From Wallemia ichthyophaga EXF-994 (lineage: Eukaryota; Fungi; Basidiomycota), in assembly GCF_000400465.1 (NCBI RefSeq), contig NW_008806274.1, positions 690,244 through 722,243 on the forward strand: a DNA stretch of 32,000 bases, read 5' to 3'. Both the position numbers and the translations under genes were made by a program. A model generated the notes under the pieces. The model did not search any database and was not told the origin of the DNA. It saw only the letters and a list, made by a program, of their open reading frames with translations. Below, piece after piece: positions 3,748 to 32,000 of this stretch (positions within the stretch are counted from its first letter, which is position 1; every line of letters begins with the position of its first letter).

Positions 3748-4037
3748 TGTGATATTACGGATTTTTATATTGTATTGACTTATTAATCGTAATTTTTATT
3801 ATAAGGTGTTTCTGGGGCGTTCTGACGGGGATCTTGAGGTGTTTTGAGAAGCGACGATATACATTACGTTGTAACTCAGTATTTATGGAGCGCTATATAG
3901 AGTGAAAAAACAGAGCCATAAGTAGAGATAAATTAGACTCAAATACGTCCCACATATACATTTATCTTTGTTAAATTTGAATTGTTTGATAGACGTTACA
4001 ACAAAACATAGAAGAATCATCGAGCAATAGCCCAACG

Positions 4038-4129
4038 GCACGCATCGGATAGTGGTATTCCGTCACGTTCAGGCTTCTAAGTACATCGTGATGCCTCAGG
4101 CGTCCTGGGTTCGAATCCCAGTGCGTGCA
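4038..4129 (+). tRNA. tRNA with CAG anticodon, most likely tRNA-Leu(CAG), 12-nt intron 4074-4085
   Basis: Acceptor GCACGCA/TGCGTGC (7/7 pairs), A73; D arm GGATAGTGGTATTCC; anticodon stem TCACG/CGTGA with loop TT-CAG-G-[intron]-T; intron A at 4083 can pair with T32 (A-I pair); 13-nt variable region TGCCTCAGGCGTC; T arm CTGGG-TTCGAAT-CCCAG; T-tracts downstream. Confidence 0.88.
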
Positions 4130-6320: not shown

Positions 6321-6394
6321 CTCTCCGAGGTGGGCTCGAACCACCAACCTCCCGATTAACAGTCGGACGCGCTAGCCAATTGCGCCATCGGAGA
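6321..6394 (-). tRNA. tRNA-Asn(GTT), intronless
   Basis: Reverse complement TCTCCGA TG GCGC AATTGGCT AGCGC G TCCGA CT GTT AA TCGGG AGGTT GGTGG TTCGAGC CCACC TCGGAGA G: full cloverleaf, G73, T6 terminator at 6316-6311. Confidence 0.96.
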
Positions 6395-17600: not shown

Positions 17601-18673
17601 CGGCAATAAGATCTGCGCTATGGAGAAGCGCCGTTTTTGCACTTGGACAGGCATTGAGTTACGGTTCTATCGCACTTATCTTCTATTGCGGCTCGCTTTG
17701 GCTTATGGACCTCACTCTTGATCTTCAATCATTTTACGTAAGTCTGGAAAGTATAATTTTCGCAGCCATTTTGTCTTCACGTATATTCACGTACGTACCG
17801 GATTTAAGTAGTGCTAGAGGAGGTGCGACTCGCATTCTGAGGCTGTTGAAACATCAAGACAAGATAGAAATTGATAGTGCCAATTATAGCGGCAAGCACC
17901 TCGATACTGTTGAAGGTCACGTCACATTTGATGATGTGCATTTCAGGTATCCAACTCGCCCAGATGTACCGGTCTTACGTTCACTCGATCTGGACATCAA
18001 GCCGGGCAGTTATGTGGCATTGGTGGGGCCTAGTGGATGTGGAAAGAGTACTACCATACAGCTCATCGAGCGCTTTTACGATCCAACATACGGCTCTGTC
18101 AAGCTAGATGGACTAGAATTGCGCGACATCAATCTCAACAATCTCAGATCTCACATGGCACTCGTCTCTCAGGAGCCTACGCTCTACGGAGGCACTGTCA
18201 AATACAATATTGCAATGGGAGCAACCAAACCACATGAGGAGGTCACACAAGAGGAGCTGAAAGAAGCCTGTGCAGATGCCAACATTCTCGACTTTGTACA
18301 AGGTTTGCCGGATGGATTCGAGACGCAGGTCGGTGGTAAAGGTACGCAACTATCGGGAGGTCAAAAGCAGCGTATCGCTATCGCCAGAGCTCTCATACGA
18401 AAACCAAAGATCCTCCTGCTCGACGAGGCTACGAGTGCACTCGACCAGAATAGTGAGGCGGTTGTACAGGCCGCGTTGGATAAGGTGGCGTCGGGTAGGA
18501 CTACGATAGCTATCGCTCATCGTCTCTCAACTATCCAGAAGGCGGATAGGATATACGTCTTCAAGGATGGGATGGTCAGTCAAGCTGGAACCCATAAGGA
18601 GCTGATCGAGGAGAGGGGTGGACTTTATGCAGAGCTCGTCGCTCTTCAAACGCTTTCCAAGCGTAGTGAGTAA
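14653..18673 (+). CDS. Full-length ABCB (MDR/P-glycoprotein-like) transporter, 3 exons
   Basis: TMD-NBD-TMD-NBD. NBD1 GASGSGKS, GQEP, LSGGQKQ, ILLLDEATAALD, IAHR; NBD2 GPSGCGKS, SQEP, LSGGQKQ, ILLLDEATSALD, IAHR. Introns 15674-15719 and 17048-17092 (the second is in frame). Confidence 0.96.
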
Positions 18674-18800
18674 ATTGCTGGCATTCAACACACAAATCTG
18701 CATTTTTTCAATCTAAAAGCACTTCTCATTAAGAAAGAAAATCACTTGTAAATCTATGTATTTGGTATTTATTGCATTGCGAAAATAACTATTAAACGTA

Positions 18801-21774: not shown

Positions 21775-24700
21775 TCAAAAGGCTTCTTCATTCTCATCGG
21801 GTTGGCGATACCCTTCTGTTTGTGAGAATACTGTTGGCGTTTCCGCTTCCATTTCCACTTCACCTTCTCCTGCTCCTGCTTCTCCTTCTCCTGGTGCATA
21901 CAGTGACTGAGGCTTCGAACCGAACAGCGTGCTTATCCTGTTCAAACTCTTTTCATCTAGCGATGTTCTACGTTCATTCTGCGCCGATGACATTGATGAT
22001 CTTGATCGCGGTGCAGCAGGCGATGGTGATACAGCAGCTGAGTGTGCTGAGACTAGTTAGTATATCCCTCTCAACCACCCATTAATATCACTCACTCGTT
22101 TTAGGTGGTGCAGGTGAAGTCACACTCGCTCGCTCCTCTTCCTCCATGCTAAGCCTCCGCCACACCCTTTTGATGTACGAGTTGAATACATCCCCTAAAT
22201 CTCCCAGCTGCTTGTCAATACGCGCTTGTTTTTCTGGATGCTCCTTTTGAAACACGTAGAGATCAGTAATCCCTTCCTTGTTCGTCGTTGATTCCGATAT
22301 TTTATCGAATATCTTCCGCAGACGCTCATTCACTCCGTAATCTTCTACAGAAATTTGCGAGTCTCTGAAATTGTTTGCAGTGGACGATACCTGCGGAACG
22401 TTCTTAATACCTAATCCCATACCACCCTCGACTGCACTTGGTGGACCTCTATTGAGCAGTCTGTATAGGTAAGTGTATACAATTGAGTCTTCTGGATTAG
22501 ATACCAGATCTAACTTCTCATACACCTTGTCATCGTACACAGCTTGATTTAAGTCAGCTCGATTAGCACTATGTACCACGAAAATTGCACTCACCAACCA
22601 AACTCTGTATAATAGTCTTGACAGTGCGCAGAGGCATGTCTCCAAGAGCAATCTCGTCACTGGCTCTACTACGCCACTCAGCTGGTGGTATCTTCTGCAA
22701 GAACTGTTCGAGTGTGTAAAGTAACACGCTGGGATCAAGACGAGCAGCCTCCAAGTCATCTTTGACATTTCTTGCCGTCTTCCATACACACTTGAGAACC
22801 AATTCAGGCAGCTTCGCTTCGGCACTCTCGTTGCGCACCTTCAAGTTGTGAAGGTTGATCGTGGCAGCTGACAGAAGATCAAATAGAGCGCTGAATATGG
22901 CTGTGAGATCGCCATGAGTGAATAACCTGAGTAAAAGCATGTTGATGAATCTAGATAAGTCTTTCAGTGAAGAGCTTTCCGCTGTTTGCAATAATCTAGT
23001 CGTCAGCTCCTCCAACAGCAGTCTTATCGAATCACTCGAAAGTGTGGCAGCTATCGTGGGCGAGTCAACCGTTGCATTAAGCGTCTGTATAAGGTGTTTT
23101 GCCAATCTGAAGACGTTCGGCACCATCTCCTCTCTAAGCGTTTCAAACGTGTTAAACATCTGTTCAGACTTCATGTCAGCAATCATTCATTTTCACTCCA
23201 AACACTCACCTGTGTTGTGATATTCGTTACCAATCGGTCAGCTTGCCTGACTAGCTCATCGGATGGACTTTCCAACTTGCGCTGAATAACCTTGAGCGAG
23301 TCGACACTCCTCTCTGGTTCATTTGACAATATCCCGGCGATTGGATCGGCTGGAGGCTGGTTACTTGATTGTATTGACTGTGCAGACTTGTTTGAACTGA
23401 GGGATGTAGGCCTTGATGGTGCTTCCTTCCCCACTTGACCGCTCGAACTAGAACTAGAACTAGGCTGAGGTAATCCAAACGAAGGTTGAGGAAGCGCGGA
23501 TGTTCTACCGAGCTGCGAAGGGGGACGAATACCTCTAGTGCCCGCGCCAATTTTGGATGTAGGGATGCTTTTGCGAGGCGACTCAACTGCTGGGGACTGT
23601 GACCGGTTAACGGTGCGGGAGGAAACTCCAGCTGAGCTCCTTGACTCTGGACGACTTGGGGACTCAGAGCGCAGTGTATTTGGTTGAGATATCCTACTAT
23701 GTGCTGAAGATGGACGTTGGGCAATGCGTGACCCAGGAGCAGGTTTGCCTGTAACAGATGTACCCCTCTCAGGCTGTCTTTTAAGTCTTTCCTCAAGCAT
23801 ACTGAACTCCTTCGGTTGCAGTTCGCCAACCATTGACCAGACTTGCTCGCCAACTATTTTGTAAACTTCTACTAGTGTGTTGAGAACCGAATTCCTCACA
23901 GCACTATCTCTGTCACTGAGACTAGCCCCGATCGTCCTCAGTGCTTTGCCAGAGCTCAGCACACCCATGCCGTGTCTATTGATGATACTCCCAAGCTCGT
24001 CAATGGACTCAGATCTTGCGCGCGAGTTCTTACAAGTCGTACCATGGTCGAGAAGATGACCAAAGACTTTGCTTGGTGGGTACGAACGGCCAAGCAGCTT
24101 GAGAATAGCTCTGATGCGCACTCTGACTGGCTCCTTATTGTCACCCGACTAGACGTATTATTAGTTTTTACCATCTGCATCAAACGCACACACCCACCTT
24201 AATGATCAACGACGGCAAAAAAGCATTGGCTTCGTAGTCCGTAAGTTGAGCATTCACCTCATCCAAAACCCTCAAAGTCAGCTCAATCACCTCCAATGTG
24301 CGCAGTATGATACTCGTGTTGTTATCGAACAATCTCAAAGTAACGTACTTGAGGATGATGTCTACGTTGGCCAAGATATACTGGCGGGACTTGTCGACGC
24401 CCAATCCAAACTTGTCAATGTCACCTAAAGCCTCTTGGACGGCGTCATTGATAACAGCCAGACCAGACAGATAGTCGGACTCGGCGTGGCGATCAGTGCT
24501 AAAGAGCAGGCTATGAAGGCGTGCACTTAAAAATGGTTGGGTTTGATGCTCCATGTAGTCAATCTGCTCCGGTCTGACACCACCTTCTCCACCAAGTGTG
24601 AATCTTGAACTACCATCCTTGACTGCTCTTTGGCGTTTGCTCATCAAGTCCGACGAGTTGAAGGGATAGCTAGTATCTGATGATGGAGTTTGTGCAGATG

Positions 24701-27700
24701 AGGTGCTTGCTATCGACCCGCTAGATGGTTTCTTTGATGGAATCCTGGCCTTCATCCCAGAAGCACTTTCTTCCTCATCATAAGCCGGAGCAGCTGTCGA
24801 TTTCGAAAGTGCACCGAAGCGACTACGCAAACCGGTTGGTCTGGCTATAGGTGTACCAGCTGTCGGTGCATGTGGTGCAGTGAATGTTGGCTTGGCCTTA
24901 ACGGGCGTGCCAGATGCTGGTGGCGGACGAACAGCGCTAGGGACCTTTGGACGACTTGATGCAGGTGCTGGCTCCACCTGTGCTGGTTTAGATGGTGCAG
25001 CCGCTGCAGGTGCTGGCTTAGCGGCTCCTCTCGCACCCTGCAGAATGGGCAAAACAGTGTTTTTAGCAGCCGGTTTCAATTTTTCCGTCTTGCTTTCAAC
25101 AAATCCATATCCTGCACTAGCAATAATGTGCGGGAGGAGAGCCTGTGCGTTCTTCCTTACATCTCCATTTCTATCCTCCAAACTACTGACAATTGGCGAT
25201 GCAAGAGGAGCCAAATCCGTGGAACCAGTCGGCGGAATTTTTTCACCCATAAACAAATTCAGCCACTCTAGCACATTCGAACGAAGCGTTGGGTTGGATG
25301 ATTCAAGAGCAATAGCTAATGAGGAAACGAGTGAATCAACACCCTCGCAAGCAGTAGCCATCGCATCAAGCGTAGCAATAGCGGAGGCTCTAACATTCGC
25401 CTTCTGGTCACTAGCTATACCGGCAACACCTGCTACGAAAGCCTTGACGTACTTTTCAAACGGCTTACCCATAGCGAGAGCGATTTTTTGGATAATGTTA
25501 AGCGCCAAGCCCTGCACGATTTTGTTCTGGTCACCAAGTCTGCCTTTCAGAGCGCCTACTAGGTCGGCGTTCATATTCGGTTGTAGTCTGGAATTCTGCT
25601 TCACTTCCAGAACCGCAAATAAACCTTCGAGTGCCTCTTTACGCGTTTTCCATGCGTCACTCTTAGAGCTTGCTACCGTGCCAGATGGAATCAACTTGTC
25701 GAGATTCTGACGGGGTAAGAGATCATCCATCGCATCCCCCCCAGCAGCTGCTCCATCCTTTGGTGCCCCTCCTGCTGGCGGTTTGGCTGCATCAGCGCAA
25801 GACCTAGAGGGTTCTGGCGGCTCCTGCCCTTCGACTTTGGCGAACTCTGAGTCGATCGTCGTTAGCAGTTGAGGGTTGAGATCGTCCAAGAATCCTCTGA
25901 TATCAGATCCGACGAACAATTTCAACGTAACTAGTGTCTTGGTGGCATTTGTTCTTACCATAGCATTAGCAGACTTTAAACCGGTCTTGAGAAACTCGAT
26001 GAGATCTTTCAAAGCCAAACCAGCGATACCAAACTCGTTGAGCAGCTGCTGAACAAACAACATGGCGTCAGCTTGGGCTTTTGGTGCTTTGATCTTGCTT
26101 ATAGCTTCGTAGCCCTGACTTAAGACAAACTGGTGCGACGTCTTCTCAGAGAAAATAATAAGAGTATCTCCAGCTGGTTTCTTAAGCTTCATATCACCAA
26201 TTTTCTCCACCAACGGACCCACAGCCAAGCTTGCGCAAGCTCTGTTGAAAGATTCTGAAGTATCAGCCAACACGCCGAGCAAGGAAAACTGCTTGGCAGA
26301 TACTTGAAAGTTCTTTTCAGCCCATCCTGGTTTCTTGCTGAGGAATCTGAAGAGCACTTCGCATGATAGCTGTTGGTGGTTCTCCTCATCTATGCACCAT
26401 TTGTGAAGATCTTCTATACCCTGCAATCTTTCCTTCCAGTTGCTGTCACTGAGCTGCGAGACTAGCTTTTCTGGTATGAGCTCAGCAGCTTTGGCTTCTG
26501 CATCTTCAGCTGACATTGACAACTTCGGCTGCTCAGATGGCGCAACACCACCAGTCGACTTGGGTTTGCTGGCACTAGCAGCTGGAGCTGACGCGGGTGC
26601 TGCTTTTGCTGCTGCTGGAGCAGGAGCAGAAGCTACAGCAGGTTTTTTGTTGAGCAGACGCGATGGAGGGGCTCTGGTTGGTGGCTTCACTGGTGAGGGT
26701 GGCTTGGGTGGTTGAGCTGACTCATCGAAACCATTTATGGGATCAGATTGTGGCGTTGGTGGTTTGGCTGGAGCTGCTGCTGGTTTCTGAGATGATCAAT
26801 TAGTGTAAAGCGGCTTCGAAGGACGACCTACTCTGGGTGGTGCAGCTGCGGGCTGTTTAGGTGGTGCAGCCTTAAGAGCTGGCGCTGATACTGCCGCCGC
26901 TTTTGGTTTAAACCCGGGCTTAGCCTTCACTTCAGCCTTCTCGTAGAACTCCATCACCTTCCCCTTACGCTGACCATCGAGACTTTCAACGATGGGGTTC
27001 ATGGCACGCTCGCCGACGATCTTCATGAGCGTACCGAGCGACTCTGCAGACGCTGCACGTACTGGCTCGAAACTGTCCTCCAAGGTAGCTGTACACACGG
27101 CGCCGATGTCCTTCTGCTCGGATTGTGTGGGTGGTGCTTTCGTGCTTTTCAAAGCCCGAACGAGGAACTGTAGTGTACCTTGTTTTACCTGTGGATTCTT
27201 GTGCTTGGCGTAGGTTGTAATGTCATCCATAAAGTCACTAAAGCTAGTGGCGGCGAAGATGGCATCCAAGGCGCCACCAAGCGCATCAGCGACAGTTGCT
27301 TTGCGCTCTTTTAGACGTTCGAAGAGGGGTTTGGAAATGGTGTTTTTGAATCCAGCAAAAGTCGAAGACGGCAGACCCCTTCCGAGCTTCTCTAGCGCCT
27401 GAGCAGCGCCAATAACAACATTAATGTTAAGCTCTGATATGCGCCTTGCTAAGGCGTTGATGAGGTCAGAGTAGTCGGATGAGGCTTCAATTTTGGGTGC
27501 CTTGTTGAGAGTTTCTAGGAGCTGATCAATCACTTCTTTCCTCTCCTGCCACTTCTTGCTTTCGATTAAGGTATAAAATTCTGGGTTGAGTGTCTTGATC
27601 AAGTCGACTGGCGGAATATCTTCATTTGGATCGAAGCCTAAATCCATAGCGCCGTCATCTTGGTTTGATTCAGCGACACCTTCTTCTTCACCGCCAGCTT

Positions 27701-28570
27701 GAGCAGCCTCAGCTTCAGCTTGAGCTTGCCTGGTAAGCCGCGATGCTTTGCCAGATCCTGCACCCTTTCCGTCGCTTTCAAGGTTCTCGAAGCTCTCCTT
27801 GAGTTCTTTAACCTGAACAGGCTTAAGTTCTTCTAGTAGCGGGAATAGAGATTGTCCTAGATAGGTATAAATTGATTGAGCGAGCAGCGTACCTTCAGAT
27901 CTGACGTTTTTATCTGAATGAGCGAATATTCTGGTCAGTGATTTGAGGAGTGGCTTGGTGTTTGTGATTGGCTTGAAGCCAAATTGCGACACCAACTCCT
28001 TCAGCGCGGTGACACAAGTTGCGACCAGCTTTGGCTGTTTAGCAGCGAGTGAGTCGATGACGTTTGCGATGACCGTATCTGCTGTGCCATCCACCTCAAC
28101 AAAGGACAAACACAACTCGATTGCCTTAACTTTGGTCGCTGGTCTCGATGCATTGAACGCCTTTTCAATCGTTGGCTTGCACAGCTCGCCTGAAAGACTC
28201 GCTGCATTCTGGCCAGATTGCTTGAGCAACTCAGTCAACGCCTCGATACCCTTGTCTTGGGCGGCAGCGTTGGAGTCTGTGACAAATTTACTTAGTGTGT
28301 CTGGGCTGCTGAGCCATGGCTTCAACACTGGATCGTCATCTGAAGCGCTCTTCTTGAATTGGTCGATGAGTTCCGCGTAGGCGCTCAATCTGGCTTTCCA
28401 GGACTACTGAGCATGTCAATGGGTGTCTACACGGCTGTATTTTTCCCCACCGCATGTTTAACGCGTTCCGTCAGCGCTATTTGGCTGAAATCTTCTTCCG
28501 GCGGCGGCTGGCCGTCCCTGAAGATAAATAAGTCTGGAGATCTCCGTGCATTACTAGTAATCTCCTACAT
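21775..28570 (-). CDS. STU2: XMAP215/Dis1-family microtubule polymerase (Stu2/Alp14/CKAP5-like), long multi-TOG form, 8 exons
   Basis: TOG motifs SWKARLSAY, KKWQERKE, SNWKERLQG and DAWKTRKEALE, plus C-terminal ALGDMPLRTVKTIIQSL. Introns 28568-28518, 28450-28404, 26831-26787, 24197-24149, 23209-23169, 22594-22543 and 22095-22053. The extreme 3' end is slightly uncertain. Confidence 0.93.
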
Positions 28571-28742: not shown

Positions 28743-30011
28743 TCACGACACCACACCTTCCGACTGCTCGCCACCGTGTATGACTTGATCGTCGAGTGTC
28801 TCTGTATAACCCACGTGCTGCACATACTCCTGGTCATCTGTTTCCCATTCGATATCCGAATTGGTGGATTTAACTGGCTTGATATGTCTGCCTGGTGCGG
28901 CTGGAAACGCATCACTGAACAGCTCATCAACTATCCGCGCAATTGGCTTTGAAATCCAGCGTCGTGGCGGTGGATACGCGTCCGTGTATTTGGGACCTTT
29001 CCTGAAGGTGCTCAGTGGGTGCCCACCGCTAAACCACGCGAGATGTCCGCCGTGTTTTGTATGGTAAATGTGCACGTTTGGGTTGGCTTTGCATTTGTAT
29101 AGATTGGAGGGAGATGATTTACACTCCTCTGCGGGCTCTGGCCAGGCTTCTGGCATTACTATTGGATCATCTTCCGCGTTCACCCCGAGAAGAGGTATTT
29201 TTACGTTATGGAGGAAGGCACTGGATGATGCGTAGGCATAGAAGGCTTCTGCAGATGGGAACGGGAAGTGTGGAGGGTGTCCTCCCAACTTTCTTGTGAT
29301 TGTGTTATCGAAATCCTTCACTGTGGGCCATCTTAGCGCGTCTAAATGAGCCAGCTCCTGGGGATGCGTATTTTTGATAGCGTGACTGTGCTTTCTGAGT
29401 ATATTCTTCAAATTGTTTCCCATTGCGCGGTTATAGAGGTAGTGGCCGAGAAAAGTGCTTTCGAGCTGTTCACTAGACTTGACAAGATCCCAAGGGTTGC
29501 CTAGAGCAATAGCAGCCTTGAATGGACATCTATCGCCTTCTTCACCAACGAATTTTGTCAAAACATTTGCGCCTAAACTGAAACCCACTCCGATAAACTG
29601 CGCTGAGGGGTAAGTGTTGGAGAGGTAGAGCATCGCGCAACGCAGATCATTTGTTTGTCCTCCGCTGTAGAATAACGGGCTATCCACGCTTGTATTCGCG
29701 CATCCTCGGAAATTCATCACGACTGAGGTGGTGTTCGCGGATAACTGTGCAATGAGCGATCTGATATACGACTCGTGTGAGCCACCAGTGAGCCCGTGGC
29801 AGAATACAACCACATTCAGCTTCCCCGGGTTGTGAATATCGAGTGAAAGTGATCCGCCGTCTTTGAGAGATAGAGTATGCCTCCGATATTCGACGGAATC
29901 AATCTGAGTGGTGTCGAGGAGAGTGGCGAATATAGTCTGTAAATGGCCACCAGGCAGCCACGCCGATGGAATAAAATTTTGACTAAACGCGTCTTTAACC
30001 AGTGCGTCCAT
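28743..30011 (-). CDS. Alpha/beta hydrolase, Eht1/Eeb1-ABHD3 (UPF0017) family acyltransferase/esterase
   Basis: GGHLQT, HGLTGGSHESY, VMNFRGC, nucleophile GFSLGAN, acid NAEDDP, His GGHLAW. First in-frame ATG 30011. A terminal intron near 28750 may alter the last few residues. Confidence 0.9.
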   Translation of the reverse strand: MDALVKDAFSQNFIPSAWLPGGHLQTIFATLLDTTQIDSVEYRRHTLSLKDGGSLSLDIHNPGKLNVVVFCHGLTGGSHESYIRSLIAQLSANTTSVVMNFRGCANTSVDSPLFYSGGQTNDLRCAMLYLSNTYPSAQFIGVGFSLGANVLTKFVGEEGDRCPFKAAIALGNPWDLVKSSEQLESTFLGHYLYNRAMGNNLKNILRKHSHAIKNTHPQELAHLDALRWPTVKDFDNTITRKLGGHPPHFPFPSAEAFYAYASSSAFLHNVKIPLLGVNAEDDPIVMPEAWPEPAEECKSSPSNLYKCKANPNVHIYHTKHGGHLAWFSGGHPLSTFRKGPKYTDAYPPPRRWISKPIARIVDELFSDAFPAAPGRHIKPVKSTNSDIEWETDDQEYVQHVGYTETLDDQVIHGGEQSEGVVS

Positions 30012-32000
30012 GATGTCAAGGGACAAAAGCAAATTGCTGTTCGATCCCAAGCGACATGATCCAGTAAAATTCAGTAATAATCATTTAAATAAAAAGAAGT
30101 CAAGCGATGGCCATTCGCTGGGCCAGTCCATCTCCACCACCTCCTCCACCGTCGACGACTCCTTCTCCAGAGATCACTACAAGGATAAAGAAAAGCAGCG
30201 TAAGAAGCGTAGGGATGCTCGTTCGCAGAGCAGCCACGAGTCGAGATCTTCAAACAATTCAAACTCAAATTCAAAGAAATCAAAGGATGAGCCGGCGTCG
30301 GCGTTTTTAGTCCAGTTGAAGCGCGCTTATAGAGACATAATGGATACAGAGAACAAGCTAATCGATGAACGTAGAATGGCGATCACTTCCTCTACCAAAA
30401 TATCCCTTTTCGGCCAAAACCCGGGGAAATCGAACGACGACTTGAATTGGATACGCTTGGTTAACAAGCACAAATCTCTTGCCGACGCTTATCACAGCTT
30501 TCTTGCTACTTCTCTCGCTCCCCACACCCCAACTTCCCTGCACGCCCTGCCCCAGAAGTACAACATCCCCACAAGACTCTGGCAGAATGCTTTCCATGGC
30601 CTGCTCGAGAAAATGAGGAGTGGGCTGAATCCAAAAAACCCCAGCTCTATTCTAGACCATCTCAGCGACTTTGTCTATCACGCGTACGCCTTCTATACCA
30701 ACCTACTAGAAGAACCGGTTCTGTCGCCATTCAAAGCAAGCTGGATTGAGGCTCTCGGAGATCTAGCGAGGTATAGAATGGCTGTAGCATCCATCGAGTC
30801 CACAGTTTCCACCGGTAACGGTAGTAGTAGCAGCCCGTATTCGCTACCTACCACTTTTGCCACTCCAGCGCCACCCACACCTTTCCAGGCACGCGTAGAT
30901 GACTCGCAGCCAGAGATGCCACCTCATGCCGATGTTGCCAGCGTTGGTTTGCCAGCGTTGATGTCTGGTGGTTTTGATGTTGAGGACAGACACCTATGGA
31001 GGCAGGTTGCGCGCGACTGGTATGGCCAAGGGCTTCGAGATATGCCAGGTTGGTTGCTTCTACCACGCTAACACTCGCACTCATTCAACTACAGGCACTG
31101 GTCGACTGCAACACCACCTGGGTGTCCTTTGCAGGAATTCGCAGGACCCCGATGAGGGATTGCGAGCGCTATACCATCTCTGTAAAGCACTCACAACCTC
31201 CCACCCCTACCCCACTGCTCGAGAGACATTGCTTGGTCTGTTCGACCCCGAGCTGCAGAGTGCGCGAAAGAGGGAGGAGAGTGTAACTGAGCTCTTTACA
31301 CACGCACACGGACTGCTCTTCACGCGTGTCGAGCTGGATAGCTTTCCTCAAGCGCACGAGCGTCTCGTTGCACATCTCCAAGCTAAGCGCGCATCATTGC
31401 CCGATTCGGTGTGGATCATGATGGGCGTGGTGAACATAGCAAGTTTGCTGCAATACGGGCAGGATGACAGTGTTCTAAAACGTACCGCGGCTGCGACAGA
31501 TGACGGAGCGAAGCGACAGAAACAGCTTCACACATCGACTTCAAACCCTTCTCTCAACTCGGGCGGCGCTTTCAGTGCGCTTAGCTCCCCAGTCCCACCC
31601 GTGCCAGCATTACCGCAGGCGATCATGATGCATTCGAATAACAGGACAGGCAGTAACCCCAATCTCAATCTCATGTCGAGCAGTCCCAAATCAAGTCACT
31701 CGTTGGAGAATCTCAACAACTTCAATAACAGACCAGCCTCCAGCGCCAGCACGCGATCAGGTGGTGGCGACGACGATGTGCTCCTCGCGCTGAATAAGGA
31801 GGGCGTCAGCGAGGAGTATAGCACATCCAATACGGTTTTCGAGCATGCGCAGGAGATGACGTTCAGTATATTCGCTCTCCTCCTCCAGAAGCCTACTACG
31901 ACTAGAGAGGGAGGTGAAGGAGGGGCACCACTTAACCCATACATCACGATCGTGATGACGTATCTGACGACGATCCTTAAGCAGCCGACTGCGCTTTCGC
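30010..32000 (+). CDS. Est1/Ebs1/SMG5-7-like protein (telomerase/NMD factor family), partial, runs off window
   Basis: PTRLWQNAFH..LDHLSDFVYHAYAFYT..WIEALGDLARYRMA..WRQVARDWY, intron 31049-31094, then GRLQHHLGVL..ALYHLCK..HGLLFT..WIMMGVVNI..LNPYITIVMTYL; frame open to 32000. Confidence 0.88.

What the first reader, a model, noticed from the sequence alone, without database searches (positions are those of the whole stretch)
29935..30340. Two divergent genes whose start codons overlap in one CATG, leaving no intergenic promoter
Seen: plus-strand CATG at 30009-30012 supplies ATG 30011-30009 for the minus-strand hydrolase and ATG 30010-30012 for the plus-strand Est1/SMG-like gene. The hydrolase needs this ATG, because its conserved GHLQT motif starts only 21 codons downstream and the next Met is about 100 codons later. 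The Est1-like frame is closed by TGA at 29980 and stays open for 110 codons before its next Met (30340), which lies after a QLKRAYRDI segment I recall as conserved. Inference: each promoter and 5' UTR must lie inside the other gene's coding sequence, and the two mRNAs overlap antisense at their 5' ends. Candidate embedded elements are the AT island 30065-30097 (TTTATTTAAA on the minus strand, encoding VKFSNNHLNKKK on the plus strand) and ATAAAATTTT/ACGCGT at 29971-29992. This could force mutual transcriptional interference between an NMD/telomerase factor and a lipid ester enzyme.
Basis: partly seen in the sequence, partly recalled or inferred. Interest (0 to 1): 0.75.

Follow-up and report, generated by a model that had tools for sequence, protein, structure and literature searches.

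The report
Two fungal genes with touching starts
In a Wallemia-type fungus with a very compact genome, a hydrolase gene and an SMG6-like RNA-decay gene point away from each other with start codons that touch, and related species keep this layout, so each promoter must lie inside the other gene's coding sequence; it is real, but it is the extreme end of a known pattern and no transcript data exist yet.

Summary
CATG at 30009-30012 gives ATG 30011..30009 for a 422-aa YheT/ABHD-type hydrolase on the minus strand. It also gives ATG 30010-30012 for an SMG6/Est1-like gene on the plus strand.

Both starts are anchored. Every Wallemia hydrolase homologue begins MDxLVK at this Met. The SMG6-like gene carries a motif conserved across basidiomycetes (LFDPKxxDPVxF) at codons 10-21. 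Its first 110 codons show pN 0.05-0.08 against a saturated pS of 0.76-0.86.

The head-to-head layout is conserved in five Wallemia-clade taxa. The distance between the start codons is -2, 11, 12, 18 and -2 to +4 nt.

The literal CATG sharing is lineage-specific. The ancestral SMG6 ATG is AGG in the window, and a second in-frame ATG (30013) could be used instead.

Synonymous sites are saturated, so no long embedded DNA element exists.

Other divergent pairs in the window are only 82 and 140 nt apart, so this pair is the extreme of genus-wide compaction. Promoters inside the partner's coding sequence follow from geometry. Overlap of the two mRNAs and interference between them are untested. Interest is moderate.

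The parts
28743..30011 (-). Coding sequence of a 422-aa alpha/beta hydrolase (YheT/ABHD1-3/Eht1-like), single exon, stop codon at 28743-28745
   Evidence: ORF. Pfam Abhydrolase_1, E 1.5e-11. 469 homologues, best from Wallemia at 58-70% identity. GFSLG, DDP and GGH catalytic motifs are present in the translation. The intron that relatives carry at codon 260 is absent here.
30009..30012 (.). CATG palindrome holding both start codons (minus ATG 30011..30009; plus ATG 30010-30012)
   Evidence: Read directly. The same CATG overlap is possible in the AT-rich taxon L007/L012, but not in L005, L006 or W. mellicola.
30013..30015 (+). Second in-frame ATG of the SMG6-like gene, an alternative start with A at -3
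30019..30021 (+). AGG codon that aligns with the start ATG of the SMG6-like gene in L005, L006 and W. mellicola (the lost ancestral start)
   Evidence: DNA alignment A2. W. mellicola model P0174 starts MSKNKLLFDP.
30010..31048 (+). Exon 1 of the SMG6/Est1-like gene (codons 1-346 and the first 2 nt of codon 347)
   Evidence: ORF. Homologues. Alignment A1. pN/pS.
30034..30072 (+). Codons 9-21, LLFDPKRHDPVKF: N-terminal peptide motif conserved across basidiomycete SMG6-like proteins
   Evidence: Alignment A1: P13 and D17 nearly invariant, consensus QLFDPRxxDPVxF. The Rhodotorula and Ceratobasidium models carry it too.
31049..31094 (+). 46-nt GT..AG intron with a CTAAC branch site
   Evidence: Read from the sequence. 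The spliced translation continues into the conserved GTGRLQHHLG and gives an EST1_DNA_bind hit.
31095..32000 (+). Exon 2 of the SMG6-like gene, cut by the end of the window (the orthologue is 1123 aa with a C-terminal PIN domain)
29980..29982 (+). TGA closing the SMG6-like frame 10 codons upstream of ATG 30010
30081..30083 (-). TGA closing the hydrolase frame 24 codons upstream of its ATG, with no ATG in between
29971..30097 (.). Roughly 125-nt zone straddling the starts with lowered G+C (0.28-0.42 per 40-nt bin).
   Evidence: G+C profile in four taxa and percentiles. The AT islands themselves are not conserved at the DNA level. The leader space free of upstream ATGs is 43 nt (SMG6-like) and 45 nt (hydrolase).

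Best explanation
This is a genuine head-to-head pair of two functional protein-coding genes in a Wallemia-clade basidiomycete. All intergenic DNA between the pair has been squeezed out.

Shown: no non-coding DNA separates the start codons (at most 18 nt in relatives).

Inferred from that geometry: the core promoter of each gene lies within the first tens of base pairs of the partner's coding sequence.

Also inferred, with no transcript data: the two genes share one compact, AT-leaning bidirectional initiation zone of about 100-150 bp centred on the start codons. Each transcription start site would sit roughly 10-45 nt inside the partner's coding sequence, which is the stretch free of upstream ATGs. 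The mRNAs would therefore have short leaders and overlap antisense by tens of nucleotides at their 5' ends.

The promoter information would be compositional or degenerate rather than made of long conserved motifs, because synonymous sites across the zone are saturated. The arrangement is a stable end-point of the genome compaction typical of Wallemia. It is not a dedicated regulatory switch.
For: Geometry.

Hydrolase start:
- All Wallemia-clade homologues begin MDxLVK at the same Met. This includes W. hederae, where 92 nt of non-coding DNA precede it.
- The next Met is codon 99, beyond the GHLQT motif.

SMG6-like start:
- The LFDPKxxDPVxF motif at codons 10-21 is conserved across Basidiomycota.
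- Codons 1-110 have pN 0.05-0.08 against pS 0.76-0.86.
- The annotated W. mellicola protein starts at the homologous position.

The gap is truly non-coding. L006 and W. mellicola are 90% identical in DNA yet differ by a 1-nt indel within the gap, 12 versus 11 nt.

Conservation of the layout: -2 nt in the window, +18 in L005, +12 in L006, +11 in W. mellicola, and -2 to +4 in L007/L012, from independent assemblies.

Compaction context:
- Wallemia genomes are 9.6-9.8 Mb and about three quarters coding (PMC3849046).
- Other divergent pairs in the window have 82 and 140 nt between ATGs, and a convergent pair has 39 nt between stop codons.
- W. mellicola annotation shows 42- and 100-nt gaps next door.
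- In Rhodotorula the orthologous SMG6-like gene has about 2 kb upstream.

Weaker support:
- G+C dips around the junction in four taxa.
- Codon identity at synonymous sites is modestly higher in the first 100 SMG6-like codons, 25/75 against 76/395, Fisher p = 0.009.
- The stretches free of upstream ATGs are 43-45 nt.
Against: - No transcript, TSS or chromatin data could be reached. All steps about where transcription starts are inference.
- The G+C dip is weak in L006 and W. mellicola (19th-34th percentile). It is largely explained by Lys/Asn-rich amino-acid content.
- The excess of conserved synonymous codons is small and could reflect codon bias in a low-complexity region.
- In L005, L006 and W. 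mellicola, an SMG6-like leader longer than 13 nt would carry an out-of-frame upstream ATG. That argues for a very short leader in at least those species.
- Hydrolase homologues of W. ichthyophaga and W. hederae sit in a different context. One Logan sample carries both contexts. The age of the pairing and the orthology are therefore not fully settled.
Confidence: 0.65

Rival explanations
1. Microsporidia-like minimal leaders. Both genes are transcribed from start sites at or within a few nucleotides of their own ATGs (leaderless or under 10-nt 5' UTRs). The mRNAs then barely overlap. Only the upstream promoter DNA, not the UTR, lies in the partner's coding sequence.
For: - The 11-18-nt gaps in L005, L006 and W. 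mellicola are bounded by an out-of-frame upstream ATG 13-14 nt before the SMG6-like ATG. A longer leader would include it.
- Other divergent pairs in the window have only 82-140 nt between ATGs, so leaders in this genome must be short in general.
- 5' UTRs under 7 nt are documented in another compact fungal-related lineage, Encephalitozoon (PMC2803860).
Against: - Wallemia is a free-living basidiomycete with an ordinary scanning-type translation apparatus as far as known. This rests on general knowledge and was not tested here.
- With -2 or +1 nt spacing in the window and in L007, even a 5-nt leader already enters the partner's coding sequence.
- There is no conserved motif abutting the ATGs like the microsporidian CCC signal.
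Confidence: 0.2
2. The zero gap is an artefact of start-codon assignment. The SMG6-like protein would really start at Met111 (30340), or one of the genes would have an upstream spliced exon. Either would leave a normal intergenic promoter.
For: - Many basidiomycete orthologues have 30-200 residues before the LFDP motif.
- An acceptor-like CAG (30000-30002) and a donor-like GTATGC (29876) exist upstream. This is read directly from the sequence and is speculative.
Against: - Codons 1-110 are under strong purifying selection, and the LFDP motif is conserved phylum-wide.
- The ATG just before the motif is present in every Wallemia-clade taxon, and the Rhodotorula model also has only 11 residues before it.
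- A 1-nt indel in the gap between close relatives rules out reading through it.
- Any upstream exon would still lie inside the partner's coding sequence.
- The hydrolase frame has no upstream ATG before its stop.
- The same N-terminus is annotated in W. hederae behind non-coding DNA.
Confidence: 0.04
3. One reading: the overlap is a regulatory device. Transcription of one gene represses the other through polymerase collision, promoter occlusion or 5' antisense pairing, which would couple NMD capacity and lipid-ester metabolism reciprocally.
For: - The geometry forces promoter-in-gene architecture, and the spacing has been conserved for a long time.
- Upstream ATGs or uORFs created by the partner's sequence could make SMG6-like translation depend on which TSS is used.
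Against: - No expression data exist.
- No functional link between the two genes is evident.
- Neighbouring pairs are nearly as tight, which points to general compaction.
- Synonymous sites are not constrained.
- From general knowledge, divergent pairs that share a nucleosome-free region are more often co-expressed than anticorrelated.
Confidence: 0.08
4. One partner is a decaying or silent gene, or the junction is an assembly artefact.
For: Annotation pipelines mishandle the locus. In W. mellicola the hydrolase is either fused to XMAP215 or not called.
Against: - Both ORFs are intact and under purifying selection in all taxa.
- The hydrolase catalytic motifs are intact.
- The junction recurs in seven independent assemblies or contigs.
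Confidence: 0.02

Closest known systems
Bidirectional (head-to-head, divergently paired) gene pairs sharing a promoter, as defined in human, Drosophila, Arabidopsis and yeast (e.g. PMC1853124, PMC2670823, PMC2648788)
   Same: Two genes sit on opposite strands and are transcribed away from each other from one short shared region. The gene order is conserved across species.
   Different: Classical pairs keep tens to hundreds of bp of non-coding DNA between the TSSs and still more between the coding sequences. Here the coding sequences themselves abut (-2 to +18 nt), so the whole promoter must be encoded within protein-coding codons.
Overlapping transcription and minimal 5' UTRs in extremely compacted eukaryotic genomes (Encephalitozoon cuniculi and other microsporidia; PMC2803860, PMC3629993; nucleomorphs, from my own knowledge)
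   Same: Intergenic DNA is nearly eliminated. Promoter signals and transcript ends lie inside neighbouring genes. Gene finders mis-predict starts and fuse genes.
   Different: The host here is a free-living basidiomycete with a 9.6-9.8 Mb genome that still has introns. No CCC- or AAATTT-like signal was seen next to the ATGs. Leader lengths in Wallemia are unknown.
Head-to-head cis-natural antisense transcript pairs (5'-overlapping mRNAs)
   Same: If the leaders exceed a few nt, the two mRNAs are complementary at their 5' ends.
   Different: Known cases usually overlap in UTRs or first exons at annotated TSSs. Here the overlap is only inferred, and it would involve the first codons of both ORFs.
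SMG6 (Est1A) NMD endonuclease family, with N-terminal short linear motifs. Human SMG6 carries EJC-binding motifs at its extreme N-terminus (PMC4132754, citing Kashima et al. 2010).
   Same: Est1-type helical domain plus C-terminal PIN in the W. mellicola orthologue. A conserved short motif lies in a disordered N-terminus.
   Different: Equating the fungal LFDPKxxDPVxF motif with an EJC-binding motif is only my recollection of a Q-L-Y/F-x-P-like core. It was not tested: the PDB search found nothing and the Kashima paper is not held.

Membership tests
YheT / ABHD1-3 / Eht1-type alpha/beta hydrolases | Alpha/beta-hydrolase fold domain detectable by profile | tested here: met
   Pfam Abhydrolase_1, E 1.5e-11, 44.8 bits against a cut-off of 25.8. 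Sources name the homologues 'AB-hydrolase YheT'.
YheT / ABHD1-3 / Eht1-type alpha/beta hydrolases | Catalytic Ser in GxSxG, plus the Asp and His of the triad | tested here: met
   GFSLG, EDDPIV and HGGHLAWF are present in the window protein and conserved in homologues (translations). This was judged by eye from the sequences. No structure was modelled.
YheT / ABHD1-3 / Eht1-type alpha/beta hydrolases | N-terminal WLPxGHLQT motif | tested here: met
   Codons 18-26, WLPGGHLQT.
YheT / ABHD1-3 / Eht1-type alpha/beta hydrolases | Ester-forming or ester-hydrolysing activity on lipids or medium-chain acyl esters | not testable with these tools
   Known only by homology to named yeast relatives (name, P0053).
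SMG6 / Est1 / SMG5-7 family | Est1 DNA/RNA-binding (14-3-3-like/TPR) domain | tested here: met
   PF10373 EST1_DNA_bind, E 2e-11, on the spliced 648-aa product.
SMG6 / Est1 / SMG5-7 family | Pfam EST1 N-terminal domain (PF10374) | tested here: not met
   No hit at E <= 0.01 on exon 1 or on the 648-aa product.
SMG6 / Est1 / SMG5-7 family | C-terminal PIN nuclease domain (what separates SMG6 from Est1/Ebs1/SMG7) | tested here: inconclusive
   The window ends before the C-terminus. The 78%-identical W. mellicola orthologue P0174 (1123 aa) has PF13638, and the downstream exon in L006 hits PIN_4. The catalytic Asp triad was not checked.
Bidirectional gene pair | Adjacent genes on opposite strands, 5' ends facing each other | tested here: met
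Bidirectional gene pair | TSSs less than 1 kb apart, with a shared promoter and co-regulation | not testable with these tools
   No TSS or expression data are available. ATG-ATG distances of -2 to 18 nt imply closely spaced or crossed TSSs.
5'-overlapping antisense mRNA pair | Transcripts of both strands covering the same bases | not testable with these tools
   No transcript-derived contigs were found. All relatives' hydrolase calls stop at the intron, which means genomic DNA. The metagenome scans were empty.

The most novel reading that the evidence does not exclude
The first roughly 15 codons of each gene act as the core promoter and leader of the other, within a single obligate two-way initiation zone. 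The spacing would be held at 18 nt or less over saturating divergence because each promoter needs a fixed distance to the partner's sequence. One or both mRNAs would be translated from near-leaderless 5' ends. That would be unprecedented for a free-living basidiomycete. It would make this locus, and Wallemia in general, a natural model for how Pol II promoters can be written entirely in codons.
Probability: 0.12. Interest if true: 0.7.

Novelty: new member of a known kind. Interest (0 to 1): 0.4.

Why it matters
The pair is a clean, evolutionarily stable example of a eukaryotic Pol II promoter pair with no non-coding DNA at all. It occurs in a culturable, free-living fungus, and W. mellicola has the same layout.

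It gives a simple system for three questions:
- How little DNA does a bidirectional promoter need?
- Can promoter function be carried by degenerate, compositional signals inside codons?
- How short can leaders be in a scanning-type translation system?

There is also a practical side. The locus breaks gene finders. The hydrolase is fused to XMAP215 or missing in W. mellicola annotations, and fused to DUF2462 in W. ichthyophaga. Compact fungal genomes therefore need annotation rules that allow coding sequences to abut or overlap.

Tried and rejected
1. Conserved embedded promoter motifs. The contexts around the ATGs show no shared signal.

2. Synonymous-site constraint as a footprint of embedded elements. 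pS is saturated (0.68-0.86) in the 5' parts of both genes, as it is elsewhere. Only a small excess of identical codons appears in SMG6-like codons 1-100. That is suggestive, not convincing.

3. G+C dip as a signature of a nucleosome-free region. It is present but weak in two of five taxa.

4. Transcript evidence. No spliced (cDNA-like) homologue contigs turned up in the protein collection. Two scans of JGI metagenome contigs with the SMG6-like N-terminus found nothing.

5. Identity of the LFDP motif. phmmer against PDB chains found nothing. The Kashima 2010 paper on EJC-binding motifs is not held. The link to those motifs therefore stays a recollection.

6. Dating the pairing through W. ichthyophaga and W. 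hederae. Their hydrolase homologue sits behind a DUF2462 gene. However, Logan sample SRR25399871 contains both contexts on separate contigs. Orthology versus paralogy could not be resolved, and no SMG6-like protein from those two species appeared in the searches.

7. The bacterial promoter/terminator scanner was not used, because it does not apply to a fungal Pol II locus.
Full report
**1. What is in the sequence**

The window is fungal DNA with about 46% G+C and introns. The best protein matches are to Wallemia, a basidiomycete of the class Wallemiomycetes:
- The hydrolase is 58-59% identical to W. hederae and W. ichthyophaga, and 69-70% identical to two unnamed Logan assemblies.
- The SMG6-like protein is 78% identical to W. 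mellicola.

The window therefore comes from a Wallemia-clade species that is not itself in the protein collection.

At 30009-30012 the plus strand reads CATG.

- **Minus strand.** ATG 30011..30009 opens a 422-codon uninterrupted ORF that ends at 28743. Upstream, this frame has no ATG before a TGA at 30083..30081.
- **Plus strand.** ATG 30010-30012 is the first ATG after a TGA at 29980-29982. It is followed at once by a second ATG (30013-30015). The next Met is codon 111, at 30340.

**2. The two genes**

*Hydrolase.* The minus-strand product is an alpha/beta hydrolase of the YheT/ABHD type.
- Pfam Abhydrolase_1 matches at E 1.5e-11.
- There are hundreds of basidiomycete homologues named 'AB-hydrolase YheT'.
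- WLPGGHLQT lies at codons 18-26, and GFSLG, DDP and GGH motifs are present.

*SMG6-like gene.* The plus-strand gene continues after a 46-nt GT..AG intron (31049-31094, CTAAC branch site) to the end of the window.
- The spliced 648 residues hit Pfam EST1_DNA_bind.
- The W. mellicola orthologue is 1123 aa with EST1_DNA_bind plus a C-terminal PIN domain.
- JGI names relatives 'protein SMG6'.
- It is therefore an SMG6-type NMD factor rather than specifically a telomerase Est1. The Pfam EST1 N-terminal model did not hit.

**3. Are these the true start codons?**

*Hydrolase.*
- Every Wallemia-clade homologue begins MDxLVK at the homologous Met: W. hederae MDQLVKQIF, L005 MDVLVKDIF, L011 MDTLVKEIF and L006/W. 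mellicola MDALVKDTF.
- In W. hederae this Met follows 92 nt of non-coding DNA behind another gene. The short N-terminus is therefore genuine and not forced by the head-to-head context.
- The next Met (codon 99) would remove the GHLQT motif.

*SMG6-like gene.*
- Codons 9-21 (LLFDPKRHDPVKF) match a motif, QLFDPRxxDPVxF, that is conserved in orthologues from Rhodotorula, Ceratobasidium, Cutaneotrichosporon and many unnamed assemblies.
- Among the window, L005 and L006, codons 1-110 have pN 0.05-0.08 while pS is 0.76-0.86, which is saturated.
- A 110-codon stretch of this composition stays open in only 0.2% of shuffles.
- Translation from Met111 is therefore excluded as the only start.
- An upstream coding exon is very unlikely. 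An ATG sits 5-8 codons before the motif in the window, L005, L006 and W. mellicola. The annotated W. mellicola protein starts there, and the Rhodotorula model also has only 11 residues before the motif.
- L006 and W. mellicola are 90.4% identical in DNA yet differ by a 1-nt indel in the short spacer between the two ATGs, 12 versus 11 nt. No reading frame can run through that spacer in either direction.

**4. Is the layout conserved?**

Yes, the layout is conserved. The literal CATG sharing is not.

| Taxon or locus | Source | G+C | nt between the two start codons |
|---|---|---|---|
| Window | this window | 0.46 | -2 (or +1 with ATG 30013) |
| L005 | Logan SRR25399871 | 0.49 | +18 |
| L006 | Logan SRR33769983 | 0.405 | +12 |
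| W. mellicola | NCBI assemblies L008/L009 | 0.40 | +11 |
| L007/L012 (AT-rich taxon) | two ENA assemblies, 99.2% identical | 0.32 | -2 to +4, or 28-34 if its second Met is used |

Sources.

The DNA alignment shows that the start ATG used in L005, L006 and W. mellicola corresponds to AGG (30019-30021) in the window. The window lineage lost the ancestral ATG. It now starts 3 or 4 codons upstream, on ATGs that include the palindromic partner of the hydrolase ATG. ATG 30013 has A at -3 and ATG 30010 has T, so the second ATG may be the one preferred.

For comparison, the orthologous SMG6-like gene of Rhodotorula sp. JG-1b has about 2 kb between it and its divergent neighbour.

**5. Context: how unusual is it here?**

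Published Wallemia genomes are 9.6-9.8 Mb, with almost three quarters coding and 514-538 genes per Mb (PMC3849046).

In this window:
- Two other divergent pairs have only 140 nt (ATGs at 2509 and 2650) and 82 nt (8672 and 8755) between apparent start codons.
- The ABC-transporter and acyltransferase genes converge with 39 nt between their stop codons.

In the W. mellicola annotation next to the pair there are coding-sequence gaps of 42 and 100 nt. The pair is thus the extreme tail of a genus-wide habit of placing promoters and UTRs on top of neighbouring genes. It is not an isolated device.

**6. How it most likely works**

*Shown:* two intact genes under purifying selection whose start codons abut, stable over divergence that saturates synonymous sites.

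*Follows from geometry and general knowledge of Pol II initiation:* the DNA on which each pre-initiation complex assembles lies in the partner's coding sequence.

*Inferred:* one shared, AT-leaning initiation zone straddles the starts. G+C falls to 0.28-0.42 from -40 to +80, against about 0.5 in the flanks. The dip is clear in the window, L005 and L007 and weak in L006 and W. mellicola.

The nearest upstream ATGs lie 44 nt upstream for the SMG6-like gene and 46 nt upstream for the hydrolase. Leaders of roughly 10-45 nt would avoid uORFs, and they would make the two mRNAs overlap antisense by tens of nucleotides.

No long DNA element is embedded. Synonymous sites are as saturated here as elsewhere. 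A modest excess of unchanged synonymous codons in SMG6-like codons 1-100 (25/75 against 76/395, p = 0.009) is compatible with weak dual constraint. It could also reflect codon bias in a Lys/Ser-rich segment.

**7. Rivals**

- **Very short, microsporidia-like leaders.** This rival is serious. In L005, L006 and W. mellicola an out-of-frame ATG lies 13-14 nt upstream of the SMG6-like ATG, which would favour a TSS inside the tiny spacer. Leaders under 7 nt are documented in Encephalitozoon (PMC2803860).
- **Mis-assigned starts, a pseudogene or an assembly artefact.** These are essentially excluded (sections 3-4).
- **A dedicated interference switch.** Nothing found here supports it, and the general compaction argues against a special function.

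**8. Caveats**

There are no transcript data of any kind.

The hydrolase homologues of W. ichthyophaga and W. hederae lie in a different context: Fungal_trans, DUF2462, hydrolase, NmrA. A contig with that context (L011) comes from the same Logan sample as L005. Either that sample holds two species, or there are two paralogues. The age of the pairing within the genus is therefore unresolved.

No SMG6-like protein from those two species appeared in the searches. This may be a limit of the search or of their annotation.

**9. Verdict**

It is a real, conserved, zero-spacer head-to-head pair whose promoters must be written in codons. The shared CATG is a lineage-specific detail, the proposed elements are not conserved, and antisense overlap and interference remain to be shown.

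It is a new and unusually clean member of a known kind: bidirectional pairs and overlapping expression in compacted eukaryotic genomes. Interest is moderate.

Noticed in passing
window 28743-30011 versus L001, L002, L005, L006: The hydrolase gene in the window is intronless. W. hederae, W. ichthyophaga, L005 and L006 all carry a 45-54-nt intron after codon 257-260, so the window lineage has lost it precisely.
   Followed up: partly
L009 1-5989; L008; L002 6001-7730: Public annotations mishandle this hydrolase. In one W. mellicola assembly it is fused to the downstream XMAP215/Stu2 gene (2586-aa model). In another it is not called. In W. ichthyophaga it is fused to the upstream DUF2462 gene (517 aa).
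   Followed up: partly
L005 and L011 (both Logan SRR25399871): The same sequencing run yields two hydrolase loci in different gene contexts. One is next to the SMG6-like and XMAP215 genes. The other is next to DUF2462, Fungal_trans and NmrA, as in W. ichthyophaga. This means either a mixed sample or two paralogues.
   Followed up: partly
window 8672 (-) / 8755 (+) and 2509 (-) / 2650 (+): Two further divergent gene pairs have only 82 nt and 140 nt between apparent start codons: a PHO80-like cyclin versus an unknown 495-aa ORF, and a G-patch protein versus an acidic unknown ORF. The starts were not verified by homology.
   Followed up: partly
window 18673 / 18713: The ABC-transporter gene (plus strand, stop codon ending at 18673) and an acyltransferase-domain gene (minus strand, stop codon at 18713) converge with 39 nt between their stop codons. 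Their 3' UTRs must overlap.
   Followed up: no
window 30034-30072 and orthologues: The N-terminal motif (R/K)QLFDP(R/K)xxDP(V/I)(K/R)F is conserved in SMG6-like proteins across Basidiomycota. It resembles, from memory only, the Q-L-Y-x-P core of EJC-binding motifs at the N-terminus of human SMG6. This was not verified.
   Followed up: partly
L006 about 3957-3963 versus window and L005: The SMG6-like gene of L006 (a close relative of W. mellicola) has an extra short intron near codon 160, within KHKxLADAYH. The window and L005 lack it.
   Followed up: no
window 6321-6394 (-) and 4038-4129 (+): Two tRNA genes lie in the G+C-poor, ORF-poor stretch from 4 to 7 kb. One is tRNA-Asn(GTT). The other is a 92-nt tRNA hit found by Rfam only, probably intron-containing.
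   Followed up: no
window 22088-28388 (-): A large XMAP215/Stu2-type TOG-domain gene lies directly downstream of the hydrolase on the same strand, about 355 nt after the hydrolase stop codon. The same synteny is seen in L005 and W. mellicola.
   Followed up: no
searches: No SMG6-like protein from W. ichthyophaga or W. hederae was returned, although W. mellicola's was. This could be gene loss, missing annotation or a limit of the word-based search.
   Followed up: no
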